Shown in pieces: positions 10,282-55,600 of a DNA stretch of 64,000 nt (positions within the stretch are counted from its first letter, which is position 1; the number at the start of each line of letters is the position of its first letter). The DNA is taken from positions 372,001 through 436,000 of the forward strand of contig DF236952.1 of NCBI GenBank assembly GCA_000708835.1, given 5' to 3'. Below the pieces are notes generated by a model. That model was given only the letters and a program-made list of their open reading frames with translations. It was not told the DNA's origin and searched no databases. The DNA is from Klebsormidium nitens. Taxonomy: Eukaryota; Plantae; Klebsormidiophyceae. Position numbers and translations under genes: made by a program.

Positions 10282-13200
10282 ATGGAGGGGCTGCGGAGCG
10301 TGCTTATGGGCGTCCTTGTTTTGGCCTCACTCCTTAATGGCGGTTCCTGCATAACTCTAGACCAAGTAGCCAGCATGGTCCCAGGCGGCAATCTTAATGC
10401 AATCTCCACGCTGAATCTCAGCTCTCGGGGGCTTACCGGTGCTCTTCCTCCTGAACTGGGTCTCCTGCAAAATCTCATTGTTCTTGACCTGTCAGACAAC
10501 CAGCTCTCAGGGCCCATTCCCCCTGAGCTAGGCAACCTTGCCGGACTTCAGAAACTGTGGCTCCATATCAATAAACTTTCAGGGGCCATTCCCCGCACCC
10601 TGGGCGGGCTTGGATCCCTCAAATCACTGGCACTCTTTAACAACAGCCTCTCTGGAGGGATCCCTGCGGAGCTCGGCCAACTGGCAAACCTGGAGTACTT
10701 CGACGTAGGTAACAATCTTTTGTCGGGAGTCCTTCCGGCCACGTTGGCCCAAATCCCTGTTCTGTCCTGGCTAGCCGTTTTCAACAACCAGCTATCAGGT
10801 GCATTTCCTCCAGCCGTCGCCGCCTCACCCTCTCTAGTAATCGCCGACTTGTCAAGGAATAGCTTTTCGGGGGGGATCCCTGTCGAGTTTGGGAGCGCAA
10901 CTGCGCTGGAGGAGCTATATCTGTGGAACAACAGTCTGTCAGGTCCCATTCCGCCCCAACTTGGAAACCTCACGCGACTACGGATATTGAGTCTTTCAAC
11001 GAACCCGCTCTCGGGCTCCATTCCTCCCGCATTGGGTGGCGCAACTGCTCTGGAGGTGTTGTACCTTTATAACAACAATCTGTCGGGTCCCATTCCTCCC
11101 CAAGTGGGAAATTTCCCACGACTCCGGAAACTGGATCTTGGAAGCAACCGGCTCTCGGGCGCCATTCCTCCGGCACTAGGCGGGCTCACCCGATTGACCT
11201 ACCTCAGCCTGTTTGACAACTCTCTTACGGGCCCGATCCCTCCGGAGCTGGGCTCTCTCACCAGGCTGCAGTACCTGTATCTCTCCTTCAATTACATTTC
11301 CGGGCGCATTCCCCCCTCCCTGGGCAGCCTTGCCAGTCTTGTAGAACTCGACCTGAGGGCATACGAGTATAGCAGCCCCACCCTGTCCGGCCCCATTCCC
11401 CCAGAGCTCGGCCGCCTGTCCAATCTCCGTTACCTGGGGTTATCCTGGAACTCGCTGAACGGCACAATTCCCCATGAATTGGGGGAGGCGCGAAGCCTCC
11501 AATATCTGCGCCTGGAATGGACCAGGCTGTCGGGGGCGATTCCGGATGCGCTGGGAAACCTCCAAAACCTGCTCTACATCAACATAACACGAGCGAGCTT
11601 GATGGGGCCGATCCCCTCGGGGCTCGGACGGCTTTCTGCGCTGAAGAGCCTGGACCTGTCTAGAAACTCATTGACGGGGCCCATTCCCCCGGAACTTGGC
11701 AACCTAGCCAACCTGGAAGAACTGCTCCTGGGGAACAACTTTGGGATCTCGGGTACGATTCCCTTGGAGCTGGGCAGGCTTACCAAACTGAGGCGACTCA
11801 ATCTGGAGAGTGCTAACCTTTCCGGGCCGATCCCCCCTGAACTTGGGAATCTTGCCAATATGGAGCTCCTTGAGTTAGAAAGCTTCTCGGACGGCCGCAC
11901 GTTGGGGCCCATACCCCACGAGCTTGGCCGCCTCGCGCGGTTGACCCATTTGGACCTTGAGAACAGCCGCGGCTTCTCAGGTGAGATCCCGGAAGAGTTT
12001 GCCGCGCTGACCAGGCTCTCATACCTGAACCTTCGGGGGTGCAACCTGACCGGGCGGATTCCCCCCTGGTTTGGGGGTCTAACCAGCCTAACCGAGCTTG
12101 ACCTCTCAGTGAACAACTTGACCGGGCCCATTCCCTCGGAGCTGACGGGACTCACCCAGCTGACGTCACTGTCGCTAGCGCGCAACAATCTGTCCGGACC
12201 CATCCCCTCTCAGCTAGGTTCCCTTGTCAACCTAACATCGCTATCGATCTACCAAAACAGCCTGTCTGGAGAGATCCCCGCCGGCCTGGGTAACCTTGTG
12301 CAATTGACAGAATTGTATTTCTTCAAGAACCGCCTAAGTGGGGGGATCCCTGCGGAGCTGGGCCGCATGACCAAGCTTAGATACATAGACCTGTCCATTA
12401 ATAGCCTGACTGGGCGGATCCCAGGGGAGCTCGGGGCCCTAGGCGGTCCAGTTAGTAGTGGCTCTTTCTCGCTTGATCTGGGTAGCAACCGGTTGTCTGG
12501 GGAGATCCCCCCCGAGCTGTTCCGCGCGCCTTTCGGGATGTACTACCTCGACCTGTCCAACAACAGCCTGTCCGGGGCGATTCCGGCGGAGATTGCCAAC
12601 ATCAAGTCTTTGGAAACGTTCCGGCTGTCCTCCAATAACCTAACCGGGGAAATTCCCCGGAGTCTTGGGAAGAATCGCGGCCTCCGCGAGATCGACCTCT
12701 CGGACAACCGGTTGTCGGGGCCTCTGCCGCCGGAGCTTGCCACATTGGACTTCTGCAAAGTCTTCCGGGTTTCGAACAACAGCCTGACGGGGCCTATTCC
12801 CCCGACCTACGCGAGGCGCCAAGACGGCTATCGCAGCGCCGGCCTTGGGAACTCGGAATTCGCCGTGGCGCACAACATGCTTTCCGGCCCGCTCCCGTCT
12901 AACATGTGCGTCTGGGACTTGGACGTCTCGTACAACGCTCTCTCCGGGCCTGTTCCCACCGACATCGCCACCTGCGTCTACGGCAACTTGGACTTGAGTG
13001 GGAATGCGTTCACTGGCTCGCCGGCGGAGCCACGTGTCCGAATGCCCCTTGTTTTGGGGATCGACTACCCCCTTCCAAAGTAAGTCCCTTCCACCTGCGC
13101 ACTAGCTTGTCGTCGTCTCTCTGGTGTCACGGGGGCCTCTTTGGAATAGGTTCTGCTTTGGCTTGTTGCACTGCCCTGCGGGTTTTCCCGCTTTCGATTC

Positions 13201-16200
13201 TGGCTCTGTTTTCTATCTTCCAACACGCATCAGGTGCTGCCTCATTTTTCCGGAAGCTGATCTCAGATCACCCGGACCCTGTTTGCTTTCATCTTTGTTC
13301 CCCCCTTGAATACCGAGAAAAGGACACTACAGAATGTCGATGGTGGCTTTCTGTGGCTCTCTGCTGATATTGGGTACGAGTCTCACCCCCTCGTCGGGTT
13401 TGCTTTTCCTTCCTTTACTTCGAACCGAGAACTTTCTCTATTTTCCGGATATACTAGAGTGCCTTTACATTACTCGCCGTCGACGTAGGTTTTTGGCGCA
13501 GTGTCCTATTACATTACATGGGAAACGAAGCTTGGAAGAAACGGACAAGGTGCGCTTGTCATGTGAGATGGCATCGGGGGCTGATATTACCGTATCTTTA
13601 AAAGGCTAGCACTCTCTTCGTTTGTAGATTCGATTCGGAGGCAGTACTGGCGAGTGAACGAAGAAAAGGTCTGTTCTCTCGTTGATTTTCTGGAGGACTT
13701 TTTAGATGCCACTCTTTCACAAGCTGACAGAGGGCACGGACTTTCAAATTTCCAGGCAGAACAGTCAGTCAGTCAAGGCCTCTCGATTGCTTCATTTGGA
13801 TTTCCTTCGACCTGCAGCTGGATGCCCAACGCCACCAACCTGACAGCCCTTCGCCTGGGTGTGAATAACCCCCCGGTCACGTCAGTCGACCTGTCGCTGG
13901 TCCCCCCCGGATGTAAACTGGTCACGATCTTGGGCCCCGCCCCCCAGTTGCGCGACATCCGCTTCTGGCGGGGCTGCTCCGACGGCTGCGCGGTGAACCT
14001 CATCGGCACCGGGGCGAAACTCTCGCAGCGCACTCGGAAGGAGGCATGTCTCGGGAAGATCTCGCTCTTTTTGGAGGGGAACTCCCCGATAGCCGTCGTT
14101 CCGCAGCTCACGACGGGCAGTACTACGCCCGAACTCCCCTACCTGTTCAACGCCCAAGGGGTGTACTGGTTCCAAAACGACACCGACTTCGTGGACAAGA
14201 TCGACCTCGGCCCGGGGGGCCTGGCCTACACCGGGGTCTCCTTCAGCCGCGTCCAGGACGGGAACCTCTGCCAAAACCCCGAGGCGAAGTACATCGTCGC
14301 GGCCACGTGGGGCGCGTTCACATTGGCTCTGCTCGTGGGGGGGATGGCCATCGCGCTCGAGTCGCGGCTGATGCCCCAAAGTGGGGGGGACAGCTGGCTG
14401 AGCAAACGGCCCATCCTGGCAAAACTTTTCGAGGTTTCATCGTATCTCGGGGGGATCATCACGGCGGTTGCCGCGTACGTGGACCTGTACTTTGACGTCG
14501 CCGTGCTGCGGGACGTGTGGGGCGTGTGGCCCATGTGGGTTCTCCTCTCGTCCATCGTGGGCCCCTTTCTGCTTTTGGGGTACTACGCGGCCGACGCCTG
14601 GGCGGCCGGGGGGGGTATTTTCAGCCTGCCGGCCTGCCCCTCCTTCCGGTGGGTTTGGCCCGCCTCCCTATCTGGGAAAACATGGGAGCCGAGCCTGCAA
14701 GTGGCGCCCCCCACTGGGAAACTACACTGGGCGCGAGCGCTTCGTCTGTGGCCGGTTGCCGTGCTGCGCCTTCCGGTCTTTGAATAACTGGGCTTCTCAG
14801 CCCGGTTCGGGCGGTTCATGCGGTCGGGGGACGCGGTGGCGGGCATGGAGGAGTACCTCAACGCGCGCGCACACCTCGATGTGGTGCTGCGCTCCTTTCC
14901 CCAAGCGGTCTTCCAGGTAAATGCTCAGGGCCTGGATTAGAAGCAGTGGCGGAAATGAAAGTCTCGAGATGCGCGTCTCCGTTAGAACGAGTCCGTAAGC
15001 GGGACTCTGAAAACTGGGTCTTCGCAATATGCAACTAGTTTCGACTAAAATTCTCTCAGCCCCTTCGCCTCCGCAAAGAAAGCGTCTCTTGGCTTGAGGT
15101 CGGTGGTTAAGTCCCTGCCATTTTCGTCTCTGTGAGAAGCCGGCTCAAGTCCAAGTTTCTGTGAATGCTGTCCGCCGCACGTTCCTACTCGTTTCTTCGA
15201 AAGACTTTTGAAAGATCAAGAGAGCGTAGCAAAGCTTCTTTTCGCACGAGTCCAGCGGGACGTAACGAGAAAGATCTCTTCGTAGCGTTGGGTTTCAAGA
15301 GAGTTGATTTGCGTATGTACCGTACGCTCAATGATTCAGGAGCTTCAACGTGGCGAGTCAGAAGATAACGAGTCAAAAGGCCCCGCCTTAACCCGCCGTT
15401 CTTCCAGTCTCCGGTTACCCCCGCCTTTGGACATGTTAGGTTAGGAAAGTTTCTCGACAGCCTTTTCGAAGCCTCGTGCAAAGTGGAAGGGCATCAACCA
15501 GGCCCGACTCAGAGTCGACCCCCTCCGTACTGCGTCTGGCTTTTAAGCGTCGCCCCGAGTACGCTTAAGTTTTCAAAAGCTCAAGAACATGAGATAGTTC
15601 TGATACGGTTCGAGGCCGTCTTCCTCCAGGCGGTGGTCCACAGGGAGTTTTGGCTGCTAACCAGGCGGGTTACCGGACTGAATCTCAGGTTACTAGACAA
15701 ATAACCCGGCTTTAAACTTGTTCCGGGGCTGGTTACCGTCCAAGGCTGGTTATTGGACACACAATCAATTTCTAACCAGCCCATAAGCAGCTCATAACCA
15801 ACCATAATTAAGGGCCAAAAAGTCCTGTGTTCTACGTCCTGGGAGTCGACCCCCTGCGCGCTTCTGGCTTTTCAAGCGTCGCCTCTGTAAGTTCCACAGA
15901 CTCAAAAACATAGAATGCTTCTCACACGGTTCGGCGCTTTCTTTCTCCAGTCGTTCGTTTACGTCCTGGGCAGTTCCCGCGGTACCCGCATCTACGTCGA
16001 CGAGAGGATCTTCGTCCCCTCCATCGCGTTCTCGATGTTCTCGCTGTGCGTTTACCTCGGGACAATGCTCCGGGAGGCGCTGCAGAGGGGAGAGAACGTT
16101 CTGCTCGTCTTCTGGCGGCGGCCCCGGAAGATGCGCACCATAACTCTGTACACGAGAGTCCTCGATGCTCGGGAGGGGGAGGAAATGCTGGAGGCCGAGA

Positions 16201-16286
16201 AAGGAGACGACGCGTGTGAGTTGAAGGGTTTAATTTGCGAAGGACGACTTTCAAGTTACTCGATTCTTCTCCCTTTATCCCCCTGA
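10282..16286 (+). CDS. Secreted-type LRR protein (~36 plant extracellular LRRs) fused to a multi-pass, XK-like membrane region; in-frame TAA at 14785-14787
   Basis: Exons 10282..13079, 13818..14916, 15951..16286 (4233 nt, 1411 codons). N-terminal hydrophobic signal (MEGLRSVLMGVLVLASLLNGGSC), then ~36 LxxLxLxxNxLSGxIP repeats. Splicing AA|C gives PLPNWMPNATNLTALRLGVN, one more LRR-like unit. About 5-6 hydrophobic segments follow, with YVDLYFDV and LRSFPQAVFQ motifs. No kinase motifs. Confidence 0.8.
15639..15829 (+). mobile_element. MITE-like element, copy 1 (~190 bp)
   Basis: Imperfect terminal inverted repeats CACAGGGAGTTTTGGC ... GCCAAAAAGTCCTGTG. Clear reverse-complement similarity to 39478..39677. 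No coding capacity and no convincing target-site duplication. Confidence 0.7.
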
Positions 16287-18331
16287 AGAAGTGCTCTACC
16301 ATTGGGATACTTCAGAAGCTTTCCGTCAGAGTCGTTTTCAAGTCCTCGGATGCATTGTCTTTGAGAAAGGATGTCGCTCTCCGTTGGAGACACCCGGACT
16401 CCAAACGGAAATTTCTGCGAATCTGTCTTTTCAAACACTGGGGGTTTGCAAAAATGTTAGTCCGGTGTTGTGCCGACGTGTGAATCTGAATCCTGGCAGA
16501 TTGATTGGCCGGTTACCTGCTAGGAACCGTATCATCTGGTCGACAATTTGCAGTTCAGACGTGTATCTGGTGTCTCCTTGCATAATCACGTAAGATTCGG
16601 CTTTGTGATGAACCGGTGACCTGGCAATTTCAGTGGCAAACGCAAGTCACTGCCTCTATCAGTCTACAGCATGATGATAATACGCGCAAAGGGCCTGATA
16701 GAAAGGTTGCAGATCCAAGCATGTGTTCAAATTGTAGAACCGGCGAACCCAAGCCGTCGATTAATTGCGTAAAAGCAATTGCTAGCTAGGTACACGCCCG
16801 TGGCTGACATTAAACTCCCTGTCGATTACACTCCTGATGATTTTAGACGCTTTTGACCCTCACTGTGGACTCACTTTCAGAGATTTTGTCAACTTGACGC
16901 GCCCCTTGCGTTATGACGTAAACGAGAAGAATCAGCTTGATGGCACGATGTCAGGTAGGTTAGTAATGCGGTCTGGCTTCATCAACAAGCACGTGACAAG
17001 CAATCCAGATGCAAGCAAAAGACCTGTCGCGATCCCTAAAATGGCCTTAGTCATCTTCTCCTGCAGTTGAGTACGCGTGAGCATCCTTCCGTGCAAAAAG
17101 CAATATCTGCTTGCGGGAAGAGATGACTTAGTATATTGACCAGCGGTCTCTAGAGACATTCAGTGGTGAATAAAGAGAAGATATGATTTAACAGTGTAGG
17201 AAAATGCAGTCCTGGACAAGATCGAGGCGTCATCCTTCCAAGGCGATGTAGCTTAGAGAACGCAACACAGGTCATTTCATTCAATTTGGTGCTAGAAAAT
17301 GCTAGAAAATGGTTTCGAATGATAGTTCCGATCTTGGAGATTAAGGTTTGATCCCTAGGTTTAAGGATTCGAGAAACGGTTGACTAACTTAAGAAAGTGC
17401 AGGCAGGTCACTAAGGGCTCACTACAGTTAATGAGCACGTCATGCCTCCGCGTCATTCATTGGGTAGCTTGCAATGTACCAATTCTTGCAACCCGCTTGT
17501 GTCGAAAGCCTGGCCGTTTGATTGGATGGAACAACTTGATAAGCCTTGTGACTCGGATCGACGGCCCCCGGGGTGACGACGCAGAATGATCGACAGCTTT
17601 AAAGCCAACAATGCACTGGCCCTTGGTTTTACATGGACCCGGTGGACTTGACCCACGCCGCCGCGAAGCCTATGTAGAAGGCCAGCTCGTCGAGGTAACG
17701 TTAACCCCAAGAATTATGCGCCACGCACTGAAGCTCGATTCTACTCCAGGAAGTTTTCTGCGCCATCGATCAGCGAGCCCATGGCCGACATGATACTACG
17801 TATTGCGGTTATATAAGAATTGTTAAGGACGGTCATTCCGTCCTCCTATTCATTATGAGCTTTGAGTCTCCAGTGTAATCATCTCGATGCCCACAAGTAC
17901 TCTAGCTCTACGAAGTTCGGATCGTGCAAGCTAGGTGACGGTGTCGGATTCGTGCCCCAGCATGCAATGCGTTACCGTTGATGCAAAGTCAGCCGTGCGC
18001 CTGACTGTCTCGCAATCAATAAACAGACGTGGCCACTTCAAGATCATCAATCTTTACATCCGTAACTGAGCATGCATAAGCGAATTATTCGTGATGAGGT
18101 CATTTCGATCTCGAAACACGGTCGGTGCCCGCGTTAGACACAGGCACGTTTTTGTACACGAGGTTTATGCGTACTGATTCAATGACGCAACTTCATGTTT
18201 TGTAATCAAGACCTCCGCAGGACCCTATATTATTAGATCATTGGTCAATCCAGGCTTCCGAACAAAATCGAACTACAACAGCAAAGCATAGCTACATCAA
18301 CGTGGCCGGTACAAAACCAAAGCCCTACGTT

Positions 18332-52604: not shown

Positions 52605-55600
52605 ATGGAGCTCCTTCCAACGGCGCCTTGTGTGCTGGCTTTCCTCCTCATCTTGGCCTTATGTACGCAGGGCGATGCCACCCAGGGAATTGGCCACCTC
52701 AGGATTCCCAGGGTTCGCAGGGACGCCAGCCTTGGTTCGCAATTGACAGGCAGTCAGAGTAATGCACCCTACTCATATCGCACTGAATACTACAGTCAGA
52801 CGTTGGATCACTTCGCCTTCACACCTGAAGCCACCTCCACATTTCAGCAGCGGTACCTGATCAACGATGAACACTGGCTGAAGGAAGGGCATGGCCCAAT
52901 CTTTGTGTACATGGGAAATGAGGGGTACATTGACTGGTGAGGTTGTGCTCCCTGGTGAGGTGTTAGAATCTGAGTGCAATAGAACCGGTTGATGGTGTGG
53001 TTGTATTCAAGCAACCTGCTATAGCAAGAGGCTTTTATTTATATAGTCCCAATCTTGTACAATAACTTGAAGGAGGAGCGAGAGCTTGCTTGATGCGCAA
53101 CTACAAATCGACAAATTAATGTGTCGATTGATTCAAACATTTCTGAAGTCAAGGCTCACAATCAGTACGTTGTGACCACGATGGGAATATCTGAATGTTT
53201 ATAAGCTAGTGTCATTTGATTGAGAGGTGTCTTGTCTTCTGAATCGCTCATCGGGCCAACTGCACACTCTACCTATTTGATATCAAAAGCCTTTGATGTC
53301 AGTGGGAATGTGCTAAATCTCCAATATATGATTGTCGAGTCAACTACTCCAGAAAACTTGTTAAAACATACTGCGGTGGCCATCCACATGTGCCAGCTTC
53401 CAATGTCTGCTTCTCTTTTGCTATGCGCTCATGCAGGGTATCAAGGGGGCTGCAGGAGCCCTTTGGTCAGTGCGTCCATTGAAACCTTCAGTATTTCATC
53501 TTTGGACCCTGCAGGTTTGCAAACAATACTGGATTCTTGTGGGATATTGCTCCCGAATTTGGTGCCCTGTTGGTATTCCCTGAGCATCGGTGAGTATCTA
53601 GTGTGGCTTTCTGTTTAAGATGGACTCGAACACCTAAGAAAATAATATACTCAAGATCCTTATAGATCACTGGAAGGATTTCAGCAGCAGTATCCTGGCC
53701 CAGTACTTCAAAATTTCATGAACACTAACTAGTTGTTTGATTGGTCAAAGAGTGACACCAGATATTTGGAGAATACAATCTGATTTTCAATCCCGAAGTA
53801 GAACGTCTGGCCGTTGCGCTTTAGCCTGTTGCCATGTCCAGCAGTTCCAGAAATTTTCATTGCACTCCTAGAGGATGTCTCTTTGGGAAGGACTGAGGTT
53901 TGCCTCAAAAATGCAGATACTACGGGGAGTCAATGCCCTTTGGGAGTCAGGAAGCTGCGTACAGGAACGCTTCCACGCTGGGGTACTTGAGCTCAGAGCA
54001 AGCCTTGGCTGACTACGCAACGCTCATTGTGGATCTGAAGAGGAACCTCAGCGCAGGGAACTCGTCTGTGGTTGTCTTTGGCGGATCATATGGTGGCAGT
54101 AAGTTGATCCTGATCTCTTCTGAGACCTGCGGTTCCTCTTGCTCGAGACTGATAAAACCACAGGTAGTCAAAAGATACATAGACATCAATGAGCAATTCG
54201 GACATACGGGTTCAATCTTGTGTAGGTGCACTTCGAAATGGACTTTTTGCACGTTGCTGTGTTCTTGTACGGGAATAACACCTCCCATAACCAACGATTT
54301 GATCAAGAAAAGAGACAACACTTTCCAGCTTCGACCCTCCTCAAAGCAACGGCTGCCAATGCAGTGCTGGCCGCATGGTTCCGCATCAAGTACCCCCACA
54401 TCGCCTGTGGTGCCGTTGCCTCGTCTGCCCCCATCCTCGAGTTCGATGACGTCGTCCCTCTCGACTCCTTCTACCACATTGTGTCTGAAGACTTTAAGGT
54501 GTGGTTGCCTTAACGGACGGGATCTACTCACTTTTGCTTACAGCTCTGAACCCTGTCTTAAGAAGTATTATGTTACATACTCTGAACCCTGTCTTAAGAA
54601 GTATTATGTTACATACTCTGAACCCTGTCTTAAGAAGTATTTTGTTGCATATTGTACTGTCAAAACGGCGTCCTCTTGATGCCATCACGTCACGTCGTTA
54701 TAGACGATCCTGTATCAAGTCGACTCTTGCAAGGTTCGGTCCGTGACTGGCTGCATTTGTCCTTTCAGGTCGTCGCACCCCCTCATAATCACAGTCTTGC
54801 CCGCATCTCCTTTTCTCTCTCTCTCATTGTCGACCTCTCAGCAATTTTACTGCGGAGGTCAGAAGTGTAAACTTGACTCGGCCATCCACTTCAATCCTTG
54901 GCGCCAAGCACGTTGTCCGTCTTTGAAACCAACGTACTTCTTGTTGGGTGTACGGAATGAATCACACAAGGCGTCTCCTTCATGGTACCTCGCTAGCCAA
55001 TCCAAGCCGTTCCGAACGTACTTCTTGGTGGAAGTAGCTGCCTGAAAGCCGAAGCCGAATGATCGCCGGTTGCTTGAAAAGGAAAATCAGGGCGTAAAAT
55101 GAAACGGGCAGAATGAAAAGAAACGTAGAAGGCCAAGATGTGGCTATTTCCAGCGTCCATCGAATCTATTCTCAAGAAAAGGAACGTTAAATGAGGACGG
55201 TATGACAGGAGGAGATTTGAGCGCCCGTGCTTTGCTTTGCAGCGGGAGAGCGTTTCGTGCTTCGAGACGATCAAGGCCTCTTGGGACGTCATTGATCAGG
55301 TCGCAGCGTCGCCGGCAAACGGTCTTCTCAAACTTGGAGAGGTCTTCCGACTCTGCCGGTAAGCCAGCATGCTATTCCCAGAGTAGCTACAGTCCTGGTA
55401 TGGCCCTCCGATTCTCACGAGCTTTGAAACTTCTGTTCTCACAAGCTTACAGTCATTGATTTTCGCCCAGAGAGGCGAGCAGGAACGCATTTTGAGCGTT
55501 ACGTAGTCATCCCTATTAGACAGGTTTCGGCGGCTTTCTTGCAGAAGCCGTGAGAGAGTACTCGGGATTCATCACGAGGGAAAGGTCGTGCGCGAGATGG

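What the first reader, a model, noticed from the sequence alone, without database searches (positions are those of the whole stretch)
10282..16286. Giant LRR ectodomain wired to an XK/scramblase-like membrane module instead of a kinase
Seen: signal peptide, ~36 plant-type extracellular LRRs in one 2.8-kb exon, a ~150-aa Cys-containing spacer, then ~5-6 hydrophobic segments and a short polar tail, with no kinase. Established: plant LRR-RLKs/RLPs are single-pass, while XK-family (XKR8/CED-8) scramblases carry a DxxxD motif in an early helix and an ExxPQxxLQ motif. Here the sequence has YVDLYFDV and DVVLRSFPQAVFQSFVYVL. Inference: a ligand-gated LRR receptor-scramblase or receptor-channel, a signalling or immune-receptor architecture I do not recognise from land plants.
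Basis: partly seen in the sequence, partly recalled or inferred. Interest (0 to 1): 0.8.

Follow-up and report, generated by a model that had tools for sequence, protein, structure and literature searches.

The report
Broken algal LRR receptor, half-XK module
This green-alga (Klebsormidium) gene joins a very long plant-style outside sensing arm to a membrane module shaped like the first half of animal XK/Xkr lipid-scrambling proteins instead of a kinase, a design found in no paper searched; this copy is transcribed, but a stop codon in the middle of the membrane module cuts it short.

Summary
One spliced transcript (RNA contigs from 4 studies) joins a signal peptide, about 35 plant-type LRRs, a Cys-containing spacer and a multi-helix membrane part. 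There is no kinase. (1) An in-frame TAA at 14785-14787 lies between the two quoted motifs, in a stretch that is unspliced in the RNA contigs and coding in every paralogue. The predicted product therefore ends at residue 1255, after only two helices of the module. (2) The main isoform has a further intron (16216-17066) and ends at 17078-17080.

The XK idea holds by fold, not by sequence profile. Pfam finds no PF09815 hit and a family profile finds nothing among PDB sequences. But AlphaFold models of two intact paralogues each rank the three solved XKR representatives (XKR9, XKR4, XKR8; Z 8.7-11.3) first among 48,161 chains, over the XKR N-terminal repeat only. A language-model search also puts PF09815 clusters first.

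The family has 40 hits among 1.84 billion representative proteins. Every named one is from Klebsormidium nitens or K. subtile. The scan has already flagged this family on other DNA of the same genome (21 notes). Function is untested. This copy is most likely a recent pseudogene or a truncated receptor.

The parts
10282..13079 (+). Exon 1: start codon, signal peptide (about 10282-10350) and about 35 plant-type LRRs
   Evidence: ORF and Pfam LRR_1/LRR_8/LRR_14 hits. 24-residue periodicity. RNA contigs cover 10700-13079 and extend about 475-515 nt further upstream.
13080..13817 (+). Intron 1 (GT..AG, 738 nt)
   Evidence: Joint 13079 to 13818 in contigs of all 4 runs.
13818..14916 (+). Exon 2, continuous in RNA: Cys-containing spacer (to about 14289), receptor TM helix (about 14290-14358), XK-like TM1 with DxxxD (about 14428-14520; Asp codons 14482-14484 and 14494-14496), TM2 (about 14524-14607), loop, IH1-like helix (about 14725-14811), beta-hairpin, first part of the PQ helix (Pro-Gln 14899-14904)
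   Evidence: Contig pieces 13818-14911 without any joint in 4 runs. Hydropathy. Alignment to paralogues. Helix assignment from paralogue models.
14785..14787 (+). In-frame TAA stop inside the IH1-like helix; the reading frame ends at residue 1255
   Evidence: Translation. The stop aligns to a Ser codon (TCT) of L001/P0047 and to coding residues in all paralogues. The preceding family-invariant Asp is Glu here. No other letter at this place in any of 4 RNA runs.
14917..15950 (+). Intron 2 (GT..AG, 1034 nt), splitting the PQ helix
   Evidence: Joint 14911 to 15946, cut +5, in all 4 runs.
15951..16215 (+). Exon 3: end of the PQ helix (TM3-like), GSSR..T..D..F conserved block, TM4-like helix (about 16008-16082), cytosolic tail. 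It lies downstream of the premature stop.
   Evidence: RNA contigs. Family-invariant residues retained.
16216..17066 (+).
   Evidence: Loose end at 16221 whose letters match 17073 onward. Depth about 131 for the spliced form against about 17 for the retained form.
17067..17381 (+). Last exon: four codons, stop TGA at 17078-17080, 3' UTR (end approximate)
   Evidence: Exact match of the loose-end letters at 17079-17102. Sequence. The contig of run X11 extends 320 nt past the joint.

Best explanation
The locus is a transcribed, four-exon member of a Klebsormidium-restricted family of cell-surface receptor-like proteins. The parts are: signal peptide, about 35 plant-type LRRs, a family-specific Cys-containing juxtamembrane domain, one receptor transmembrane helix, a short basic cytosolic linker, and a module with the predicted fold of the N-terminal repeat of XK-related proteins (TM1, TM2, inner-leaflet helix IH1, TM3, TM4), followed by a short cytosolic tail. 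There is no kinase.

In this copy a single nonsense codon (TAA, 14785-14787) in the IH1-like helix ends the reading frame at residue 1255. The product keeps the ectodomain, the receptor helix and only XK-like TM1-TM2. It is most likely a recently inactivated pseudogene: everything downstream is still in frame and keeps the family's invariant residues. At best it is a truncated, decoy-like receptor.

The mechanism for the intact paralogues is inferred, not shown. An animal XKR needs two such repeats, so I propose that ligand binding to the LRR arms pairs two receptors and brings two half-XK modules together. That pairing could change lipid packing or asymmetry, or expose a conserved cytosolic beta-hairpin to a partner.
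For: Gene structure and single transcript: (joints 13079/13818, 14916/15951, 16215/17067; a 4545-nt contig spans all exons).
Stop codon in coding context: tblastn HSPs of paralogues run through it; P0047 is 55% identical over 373 aa; TAA against TCT in L001. P0047 is one uninterrupted ORF.
LRRs, no kinase.
XK-like fold: models with pLDDT 76 and 80. In VIA-align against 48,161 chains the top three both times are XKR9 (7p16_A, Z 11.1/11.3, rmsd 3.2/3.3, 150/154 residues, chain residues about 3-190), XKR4 (Z 10.0/9.8) and XKR8 (Z 8.8/8.7). Foldseek places XKR8 at ranks 2-3 with probability 0.82/0.72, where all other rows are at most 0.11. The two best ESM Atlas feature clusters carry PF09815 (0.88, 196 shared features).
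Repeat architecture of XKR9 (TM1-TM2, IH1, TM3-TM4 in each domain): PMC8298096.
Topology fits: the basic linker after the receptor helix puts XK-like TM1 in the in-to-out direction, as in XKRs.
Family range: 40 hits among 1.84 billion representatives. All named members are K. nitens or K. subtile.
Against: No sequence-profile link to XK proteins: no PF09815 hit at E<=1, no PDB chain at E<=10, no Foldseek match at E<=0.001, nothing by shape in the ESM Atlas. Z of 9-11 is within the range the tool warns can arise for helical bundles. The DxxxD pair is not invariant in the family (several paralogues lack it). Xkr8 E141 corresponds to Arg here by my own offset counting. The RNA evidence comes from assembled contigs, which drop rare variants, so a minor stop-skipping isoform cannot be excluded. 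The models are of paralogues (23-56% identical), not of this copy. Dimerisation and any lipid activity are pure inference.
Confidence: 0.72

Rival explanations
1. The gene is intact. A 186-nt intron (14615-14800, GT..AG, length a multiple of three) removes the stop, giving a 1349-aa receptor with a shortened membrane module. This is a gene model I built myself before the RNA data; it is probably close to what the first reader assumed when reading from the DxxxD motif to the PQ motif.
For: The interval has canonical GT..AG ends, and removing it keeps the frame.
Against: Contigs of 4 RNA runs from 4 studies are continuous across it and list no such joint. The interval encodes the loop and IH1-like helix that are conserved in all paralogues, including a family-invariant Asp and the RWxWP and LWP..VL motifs. 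Even if it were spliced, the module would lack IH1.
Confidence: 0.05
2. The truncated product (LRR ectodomain, spacer, three helices) is itself functional, for example as a decoy or co-receptor that pairs with intact family members, and is kept by selection.
For: The transcript is assembled at good depth in runs of 4 studies. The 933-codon LRR exon is intact. Other database members also end near this point (P0048/GAQ79501.1, P0050, P0058, P0060), though these may be annotation errors.
Against: The stop lies well upstream of two exon junctions, so by the general 50-55-nt rule the mRNA should be a nonsense-mediated-decay target (established knowledge, not tested here). The sequence after the stop is still conserved and in frame, which suggests a recent loss rather than a long-standing short form. 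The invariant Asp next to the stop is also changed.
Confidence: 0.15
3. The membrane module is a lineage-specific helical anchor that only resembles XKR proteins by chance or convergence, with no common origin and no lipid-related role.
For: No HMM-level similarity. Foldseek E-values are not significant. The tool warns that Z below about 13 is common for helical bundles.
Against: All three XKR cluster representatives, and only they, lead the list for two separately built models, 1-3 Z units above unrelated four-helix bundles, and they cover the whole N-terminal repeat. An independent language-model search ranks PF09815 clusters first and second. By my own counting, the acidic pair in the first helix and the Pro-Gln in the third helix fall where Xkr8 has D26/D30 and Q145. 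Helix order, the inner-leaflet helix and the topology all match.
Confidence: 0.2

Closest known systems
XK-related proteins (XKR8, XKR9, XKR4, XK; Pfam PF09815)
   Same: The predicted fold of intact paralogues superposes on the XKR N-terminal domain: TM1-TM2, inner-leaflet helix, TM3-TM4 (Z 8.7-11.3, about 150 residues). There is an acidic pair one helical turn apart in the first helix and a Pro-Gln in the third. The topology has a cytosolic start. In Xkr8 the residues needed for scrambling (D26, D30, R134, E137, E141, R183) all lie in this half (PMC8500837).
   Different: Only one of the two repeats is present. There is no Pfam or HMM similarity. The module is fused behind an LRR ectodomain and an extra transmembrane helix. 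There is no caspase-cleaved tail. The position of E141 is Arg, and the DxxxD pair is absent from some paralogues. The host is a streptophyte alga, not an animal. This copy is cut by a stop after TM2.
Plant LRR receptor-like proteins and kinases (FLS2-type LRR-RLK, LRR-RLP)
   Same: Signal peptide and 24-residue plant-specific LRRs, with strong LRR_1/LRR_8/LRR_14 hits. The nearest ectodomain relatives are land-plant LRR-RLKs such as MIK2-like and HSL1. Two K. nitens paralogues are even auto-named 'FLS2'.
   Different: No kinase domain and not single-pass. No LRRNT_2 cap was detected. A family-specific Cys-containing juxtamembrane domain is followed by a multi-helix membrane module.
Paralogues in the same genome already flagged by this scan (for example GAQ78274.1, GAQ78110.1, GAQ78170.1 of K. 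nitens)
   Same: Same architecture and the same module (23-56% identity). Earlier notes report intact and frameshifted copies.
   Different: This copy has the longest ectodomain seen here (about 35 LRRs) and is interrupted by a nonsense codon rather than a frameshift. No predicted protein above 56% identity was found for it in the databases.

Membership tests
XK-related (Pfam PF09815) | Match to the family profile at or near the curated threshold | tested here: not met
   No PF09815 hit at E<=1 for the window's pieces or for 10 paralogues. The family profile finds no PDB chain, XKRs included, at E<=10.
XK-related (Pfam PF09815) | Two structurally related repeats, each with four TM helices plus a partly inserted helix (PMC8298096) | tested here: not met
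   The models contain one repeat only. Alignments cover XKR9 residues about 3-190 and XKR8 residues 7-183.
XK-related (Pfam PF09815) | Fold of the N-terminal domain (TM1-TM2, IH1, TM3-TM4) | tested here: met
   XKR9, XKR4 and XKR8 rank 1-3 of 48,161 chains for two paralogue models, Z 8.7-11.3, rmsd 3.2-4.3. This was tested on paralogues, not on this broken copy.
XK-related (Pfam PF09815) | Charged pathway residues (Xkr8 D26, D30, R134, E137, E141, R183; PMC8500837) | tested here: inconclusive
   The DxxxD pair is present in this copy and in most paralogues, but several lack it. By offset from the Pro-Gln, E137 corresponds to Asp and E141 to Arg. No residue-level structural alignment was available.
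XK-related (Pfam PF09815) | Phospholipid scrambling activity | not testable with these tools
   Needs expression and lipid assays.
Plant-type LRR receptor ectodomain | Signal peptide plus tandem 24-residue LRRs | tested here: met
   LRR_1 E 1.5e-101 with 20 stretches, LRR_14 E 6e-60. 24-residue spacing. Hydrophobic N-terminus.
LRR receptor-like kinase | Cytoplasmic protein kinase domain | tested here: not met
   No kinase family in any exon piece or in any paralogue. The transcript ends about 300 nt after the stop at 17078-17080.
Klebsormidium LRR-half-XK family (unpublished, known from this scan) | Conserved spacer, TM helix and half-XK module, colinear with family members | tested here: met
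   phmmer E 4.7e-86 to P0047 and 29 hits at E<=1e-10. Colinear alignment through the whole module.
Klebsormidium LRR-half-XK family (unpublished, known from this scan) | Open reading frame through the module | tested here: not met
   TAA at 14785-14787, present in the RNA contigs.

The most novel reading that the evidence does not exclude
Intact members of this family are kinase-independent receptors whose output is a membrane event. Ligand-driven pairing of two LRR arms would assemble two half-XK modules into an XKR-like two-repeat unit that scrambles or exposes lipids. Alternatively, the conserved cytosolic beta-hairpin would recruit a VPS13-type bridge-like lipid transfer protein. That hairpin is predicted at the same place (between IH1 and TM3) as the VPS13A-binding hairpin of human XK. 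On this reading the half-XK module would also be a living relic of the single-repeat ancestor of animal XK proteins, and the present locus a recently lost copy in a birth-and-death receptor family.
Probability: 0.15. Interest if true: 0.85.

Novelty: new variant of a known kind. Interest (0 to 1): 0.5.

Why it matters
Plant cell-surface LRR receptors are thought to signal through kinases, either their own or a partner's. XK/Xkr proteins are treated as animal scramblases built from two repeats. A streptophyte-alga family that wires an LRR ectodomain directly to a single XK-like repeat would be a different receptor output. It would also be a possible single-repeat ancestor form of the XK fold, and an experimentally approachable case: force dimerisation and measure lipid scrambling. 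No paper in the searched library describes it. This particular locus adds that the family undergoes gene death: a nonsense codon here, frameshifts in other copies noted by the scan. That pattern is typical of fast-evolving receptor families. Its own product is probably not functional, which limits the value of this copy as an experimental subject.

Tried and rejected
1. My first gene model spliced out 14615-14800 to skip the stop. I rejected it after the RNA contigs and the paralogue alignment.
2. Word-based protein search with the end of the LRR exon returned only land-plant LRR-RLKs and RLPs, with no self or family hit.
3. Word-based profile search with the module alignment A1 returned one extra fragment only and no XKR.
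4. hmmsearch of A1 against PDB sequences found nothing.
5. Foldseek against the PDB gave nothing significant. Bestrophin and GPCR rows have TM scores of 0.1-0.2 and were dismissed.
6. ESM Atlas search by shape gave only TM<0.3 noise.
7. The first Atlas call, on the window's own exon, failed because the machine was busy.
8. A search for further family copies in the window found none.
9. A repeat search in intron 2 found none.
10. I could not run HHpred or hhalign against an XK alignment, because no tool gave me XKR sequences and I did not type them from memory.
11. I did not fold this copy itself, because the tools do not take a protein read through a stop. Paralogues P0047 and P0057 were folded instead.
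12. I did not independently prove the species of the window. 'Klebsormidium nitens' rests on earlier scan notes, on family members named K. nitens or K. subtile, and on exact RNA matches in 7 studies under two coded organism labels.
Full report
WHAT IS IN THE SEQUENCE

On the + strand an ORF opens with an ATG at 10282 and runs to a GTAAGT donor at 13080. It encodes a hydrophobic signal peptide and LRRs with the plant-specific 24-residue period, about 35 units (Pfam LRR_1 E 1.5e-101, LRR_14 E 6e-60). No kinase family hits any downstream piece.

TRANSCRIPT STRUCTURE

I laid assembled contigs of four public runs from four studies on 10700-16600. The runs are labelled 'RNA?'. They carry GT..AG-bounded skips at high depth and only thin coverage of the skipped parts, so they are RNA assemblies.

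They show these features:
- Intron 1 is 13080-13817.
- Exon 2 is 13818-14916, continuous in all four runs.
- Intron 2 is 14917-15950.
- Exon 3 is 15951-16215.
- A loose end at 16221 carries letters that match 17073 onward. This defines intron 3 (16216-17066) and a last exon that adds FEYA and a TGA at 17078-17080.

One 4545-nt contig (run X11) joins the LRR exon to the last exon.

THE PREMATURE STOP

I first removed it with a GT..AG interval, 14615-14800. The RNA contigs show no such joint.

Paralogues are colinear, residue for residue, through that interval. tblastn HSPs of many family proteins run straight through the stop. P0047, for example, covers 13816-14916 in one HSP at 55% identity over 373 aa.

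P0047 is a single uninterrupted ORF on a metagenome contig (L001 6001-8343). There the codon aligned with the TAA is TCT (Ser). The family-invariant Asp just before it is Glu in the window. None of the four RNA runs shows another letter at this place.

The reading frame therefore ends at residue 1255. Downstream, the frame and the family's invariant residues (the Pro-Gln and the G.SR.T....D...F block) are still intact. This points to a recent nonsense mutation.

THE FAMILY

An exhaustive phmmer search with the exon-2 protein against 1.84 billion representative proteins found only 40 hits, 29 of them at E<=1e-10.

Of the 20 I looked up, the named ones are:
- six K. nitens proteins: GAQ78110.1, GAQ78274.1, GAQ78170.1, GAQ79501.1, GAQ81742.1 and GAQ84842.1;
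- one K. subtile transcript.

The rest come from unnamed JGI, Logan and ENA assemblies. Klebsormidium is a streptophyte alga.

No database protein is more than 56% identical to this copy, so the locus seems unannotated. The window holds no second copy. Earlier notes of this scan report the same architecture at many other places of this genome, including two frameshifted copies. I treated them as leads and repeated the tests.

IS THE MEMBRANE MODULE XK-LIKE?

By sequence profile, no:
- no PF09815 hit at E<=1 in the window pieces or in 10 paralogues;
- no PDB chain at E<=10 with the family profile;
- nothing with a word-based profile search.

By predicted structure, yes, for half of an XKR. I modelled two intact paralogues with family alignments:
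- P0047:468-780, pLDDT 76;
- K. nitens GAQ78274.1 (P0057:670-930), pLDDT 80.

An all-against-all structural search of 48,161 PDB representatives put the same three chains first both times:
- rat XKR9 (7p16_A): Z 11.1 and 11.3, rmsd 3.2 and 3.3, 150 and 154 residues, chain residues about 3-190;
- human XKR4 (9boj_B): Z 10.0 and 9.8;
- human XKR8 (8xej_X): Z 8.8 and 8.7, chain residues about 7-183.

Generic four-helix bundles follow at Z of 8 or less. The tool warns that helical bundles can reach such Z values by chance, so this alone is not proof. Three further points agree:
- Foldseek gives XKR8 the only high probabilities (0.82 and 0.72) in an otherwise insignificant list.
- A language-model feature search ranks two PF09815 clusters first and second (0.88, 196 shared features).
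- The order of elements matches the published XKR9 N-terminal domain: TM1-TM2 splayed around an inner-leaflet helix IH1, then TM3-TM4 (PMC8298096).

Residue correspondences, counted by me:
- The Asp pair of the first helix (this copy: codons 14482-14484 and 14494-14496) falls near the start of the aligned range, where Xkr8 has D26/D30.
- Counting back from the Pro-Gln, Xkr8 E137 corresponds to Asp and E141 to Arg.
- In Xkr8 the six residues needed for scrambling all lie in this N-terminal half (PMC8500837).
- The Asp pair is missing from several paralogues.

I therefore do not file the module as a PF09815 member. I describe it as a single XK-like repeat, with remote homology plausible.

TOPOLOGY AND MECHANISM (INFERRED)

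The receptor helix is followed by a basic linker. This puts the XK-like TM1 in the in-to-out direction, as in XKRs, and leaves the tail cytosolic.

Animal XKRs need two repeats, and LRR receptors commonly act by ligand-induced pairing. The most economical model for intact paralogues is therefore that pairing of two receptors brings two half-XK modules together. That could alter lipid asymmetry or expose a cytosolic element.

Both models predict a conserved beta-hairpin between the IH1-like and TM3-like helices (consensus LG.HL). This is the position of the VPS13A-binding hairpin that distinguishes human XK and XKR2 (PMC9436381). It is a lead only.

For this copy the stop removes half of IH1, the hairpin, TM3 and TM4. 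I rate it as a recent pseudogene (about 0.7) or a truncated decoy-like receptor (about 0.15). A rare stop-skipping isoform is about 0.05.

LITERATURE

No paper in the searched library combines Klebsormidium with XK-related proteins, or XK-related with green algae and LRRs. PF09815 appears in one unrelated preprint. A survey of plant cell-surface receptors does not mention Klebsormidium, Xkr or scramblases.

VERDICT

- The design is a new variant built from known parts. The scan has found it before on other DNA of this genome.
- This copy is broken, which lowers the value of this locus relative to intact paralogues.

Noticed in passing
window 16216-17066 and 16186-16600: A minor isoform retains intron 3 (contig depth about 17 against about 131 for the spliced form). 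It would end with a different 24-residue tail, with a stop at 16284-16286.
   Followed up: partly
window 13818-14289; P0047:323-470: A juxtamembrane ectodomain of about 155 aa with conserved cysteines (FW..C, GC.V.L.G, CLG.IS.FL, GNLCGNPEA) is shared by all family members and matches no Pfam family.
   Followed up: partly
P0047 model residues 190-200; P0057 model residues 144-155; window about 14812-14850: Both models predict a conserved cytosolic beta-hairpin between the IH1-like and TM3-like helices. Human XK and XKR2 carry their VPS13A-binding hairpin at the same position (PMC9436381).
   Followed up: partly
L001 6001-8343 compared with window 12088-16202: The closest relative (P0047, JGI metagenome contig, GC 52% like the window) encodes LRRs, spacer and module as one uninterrupted ORF. 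The window's gene has introns at 13080-13817 and 14917-15950. Introns were therefore gained or lost between paralogues.
   Followed up: no
window 10282-17080: No predicted protein above 56% identity to this gene was found, either among 5.8 billion clustered proteins (word search on residues 840-932) or among 1.84 billion representatives. The locus appears to be missing from the public K. nitens protein set.
   Followed up: partly
window 53900-54676: An ORF on the + strand has a partial match to serine carboxypeptidase S28 (PF05577, E 3.5e-11, profile positions 68-125 of 434). It is probably one exon of a neighbouring gene.
   Followed up: no
window 13188-13847 and 14930-15666: Low-depth contigs (depth about 3-8 against 56-124 for exons) cover introns 1 and 2 in two runs. 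This fits unspliced pre-mRNA or a little genomic DNA in the RNA libraries.
   Followed up: no
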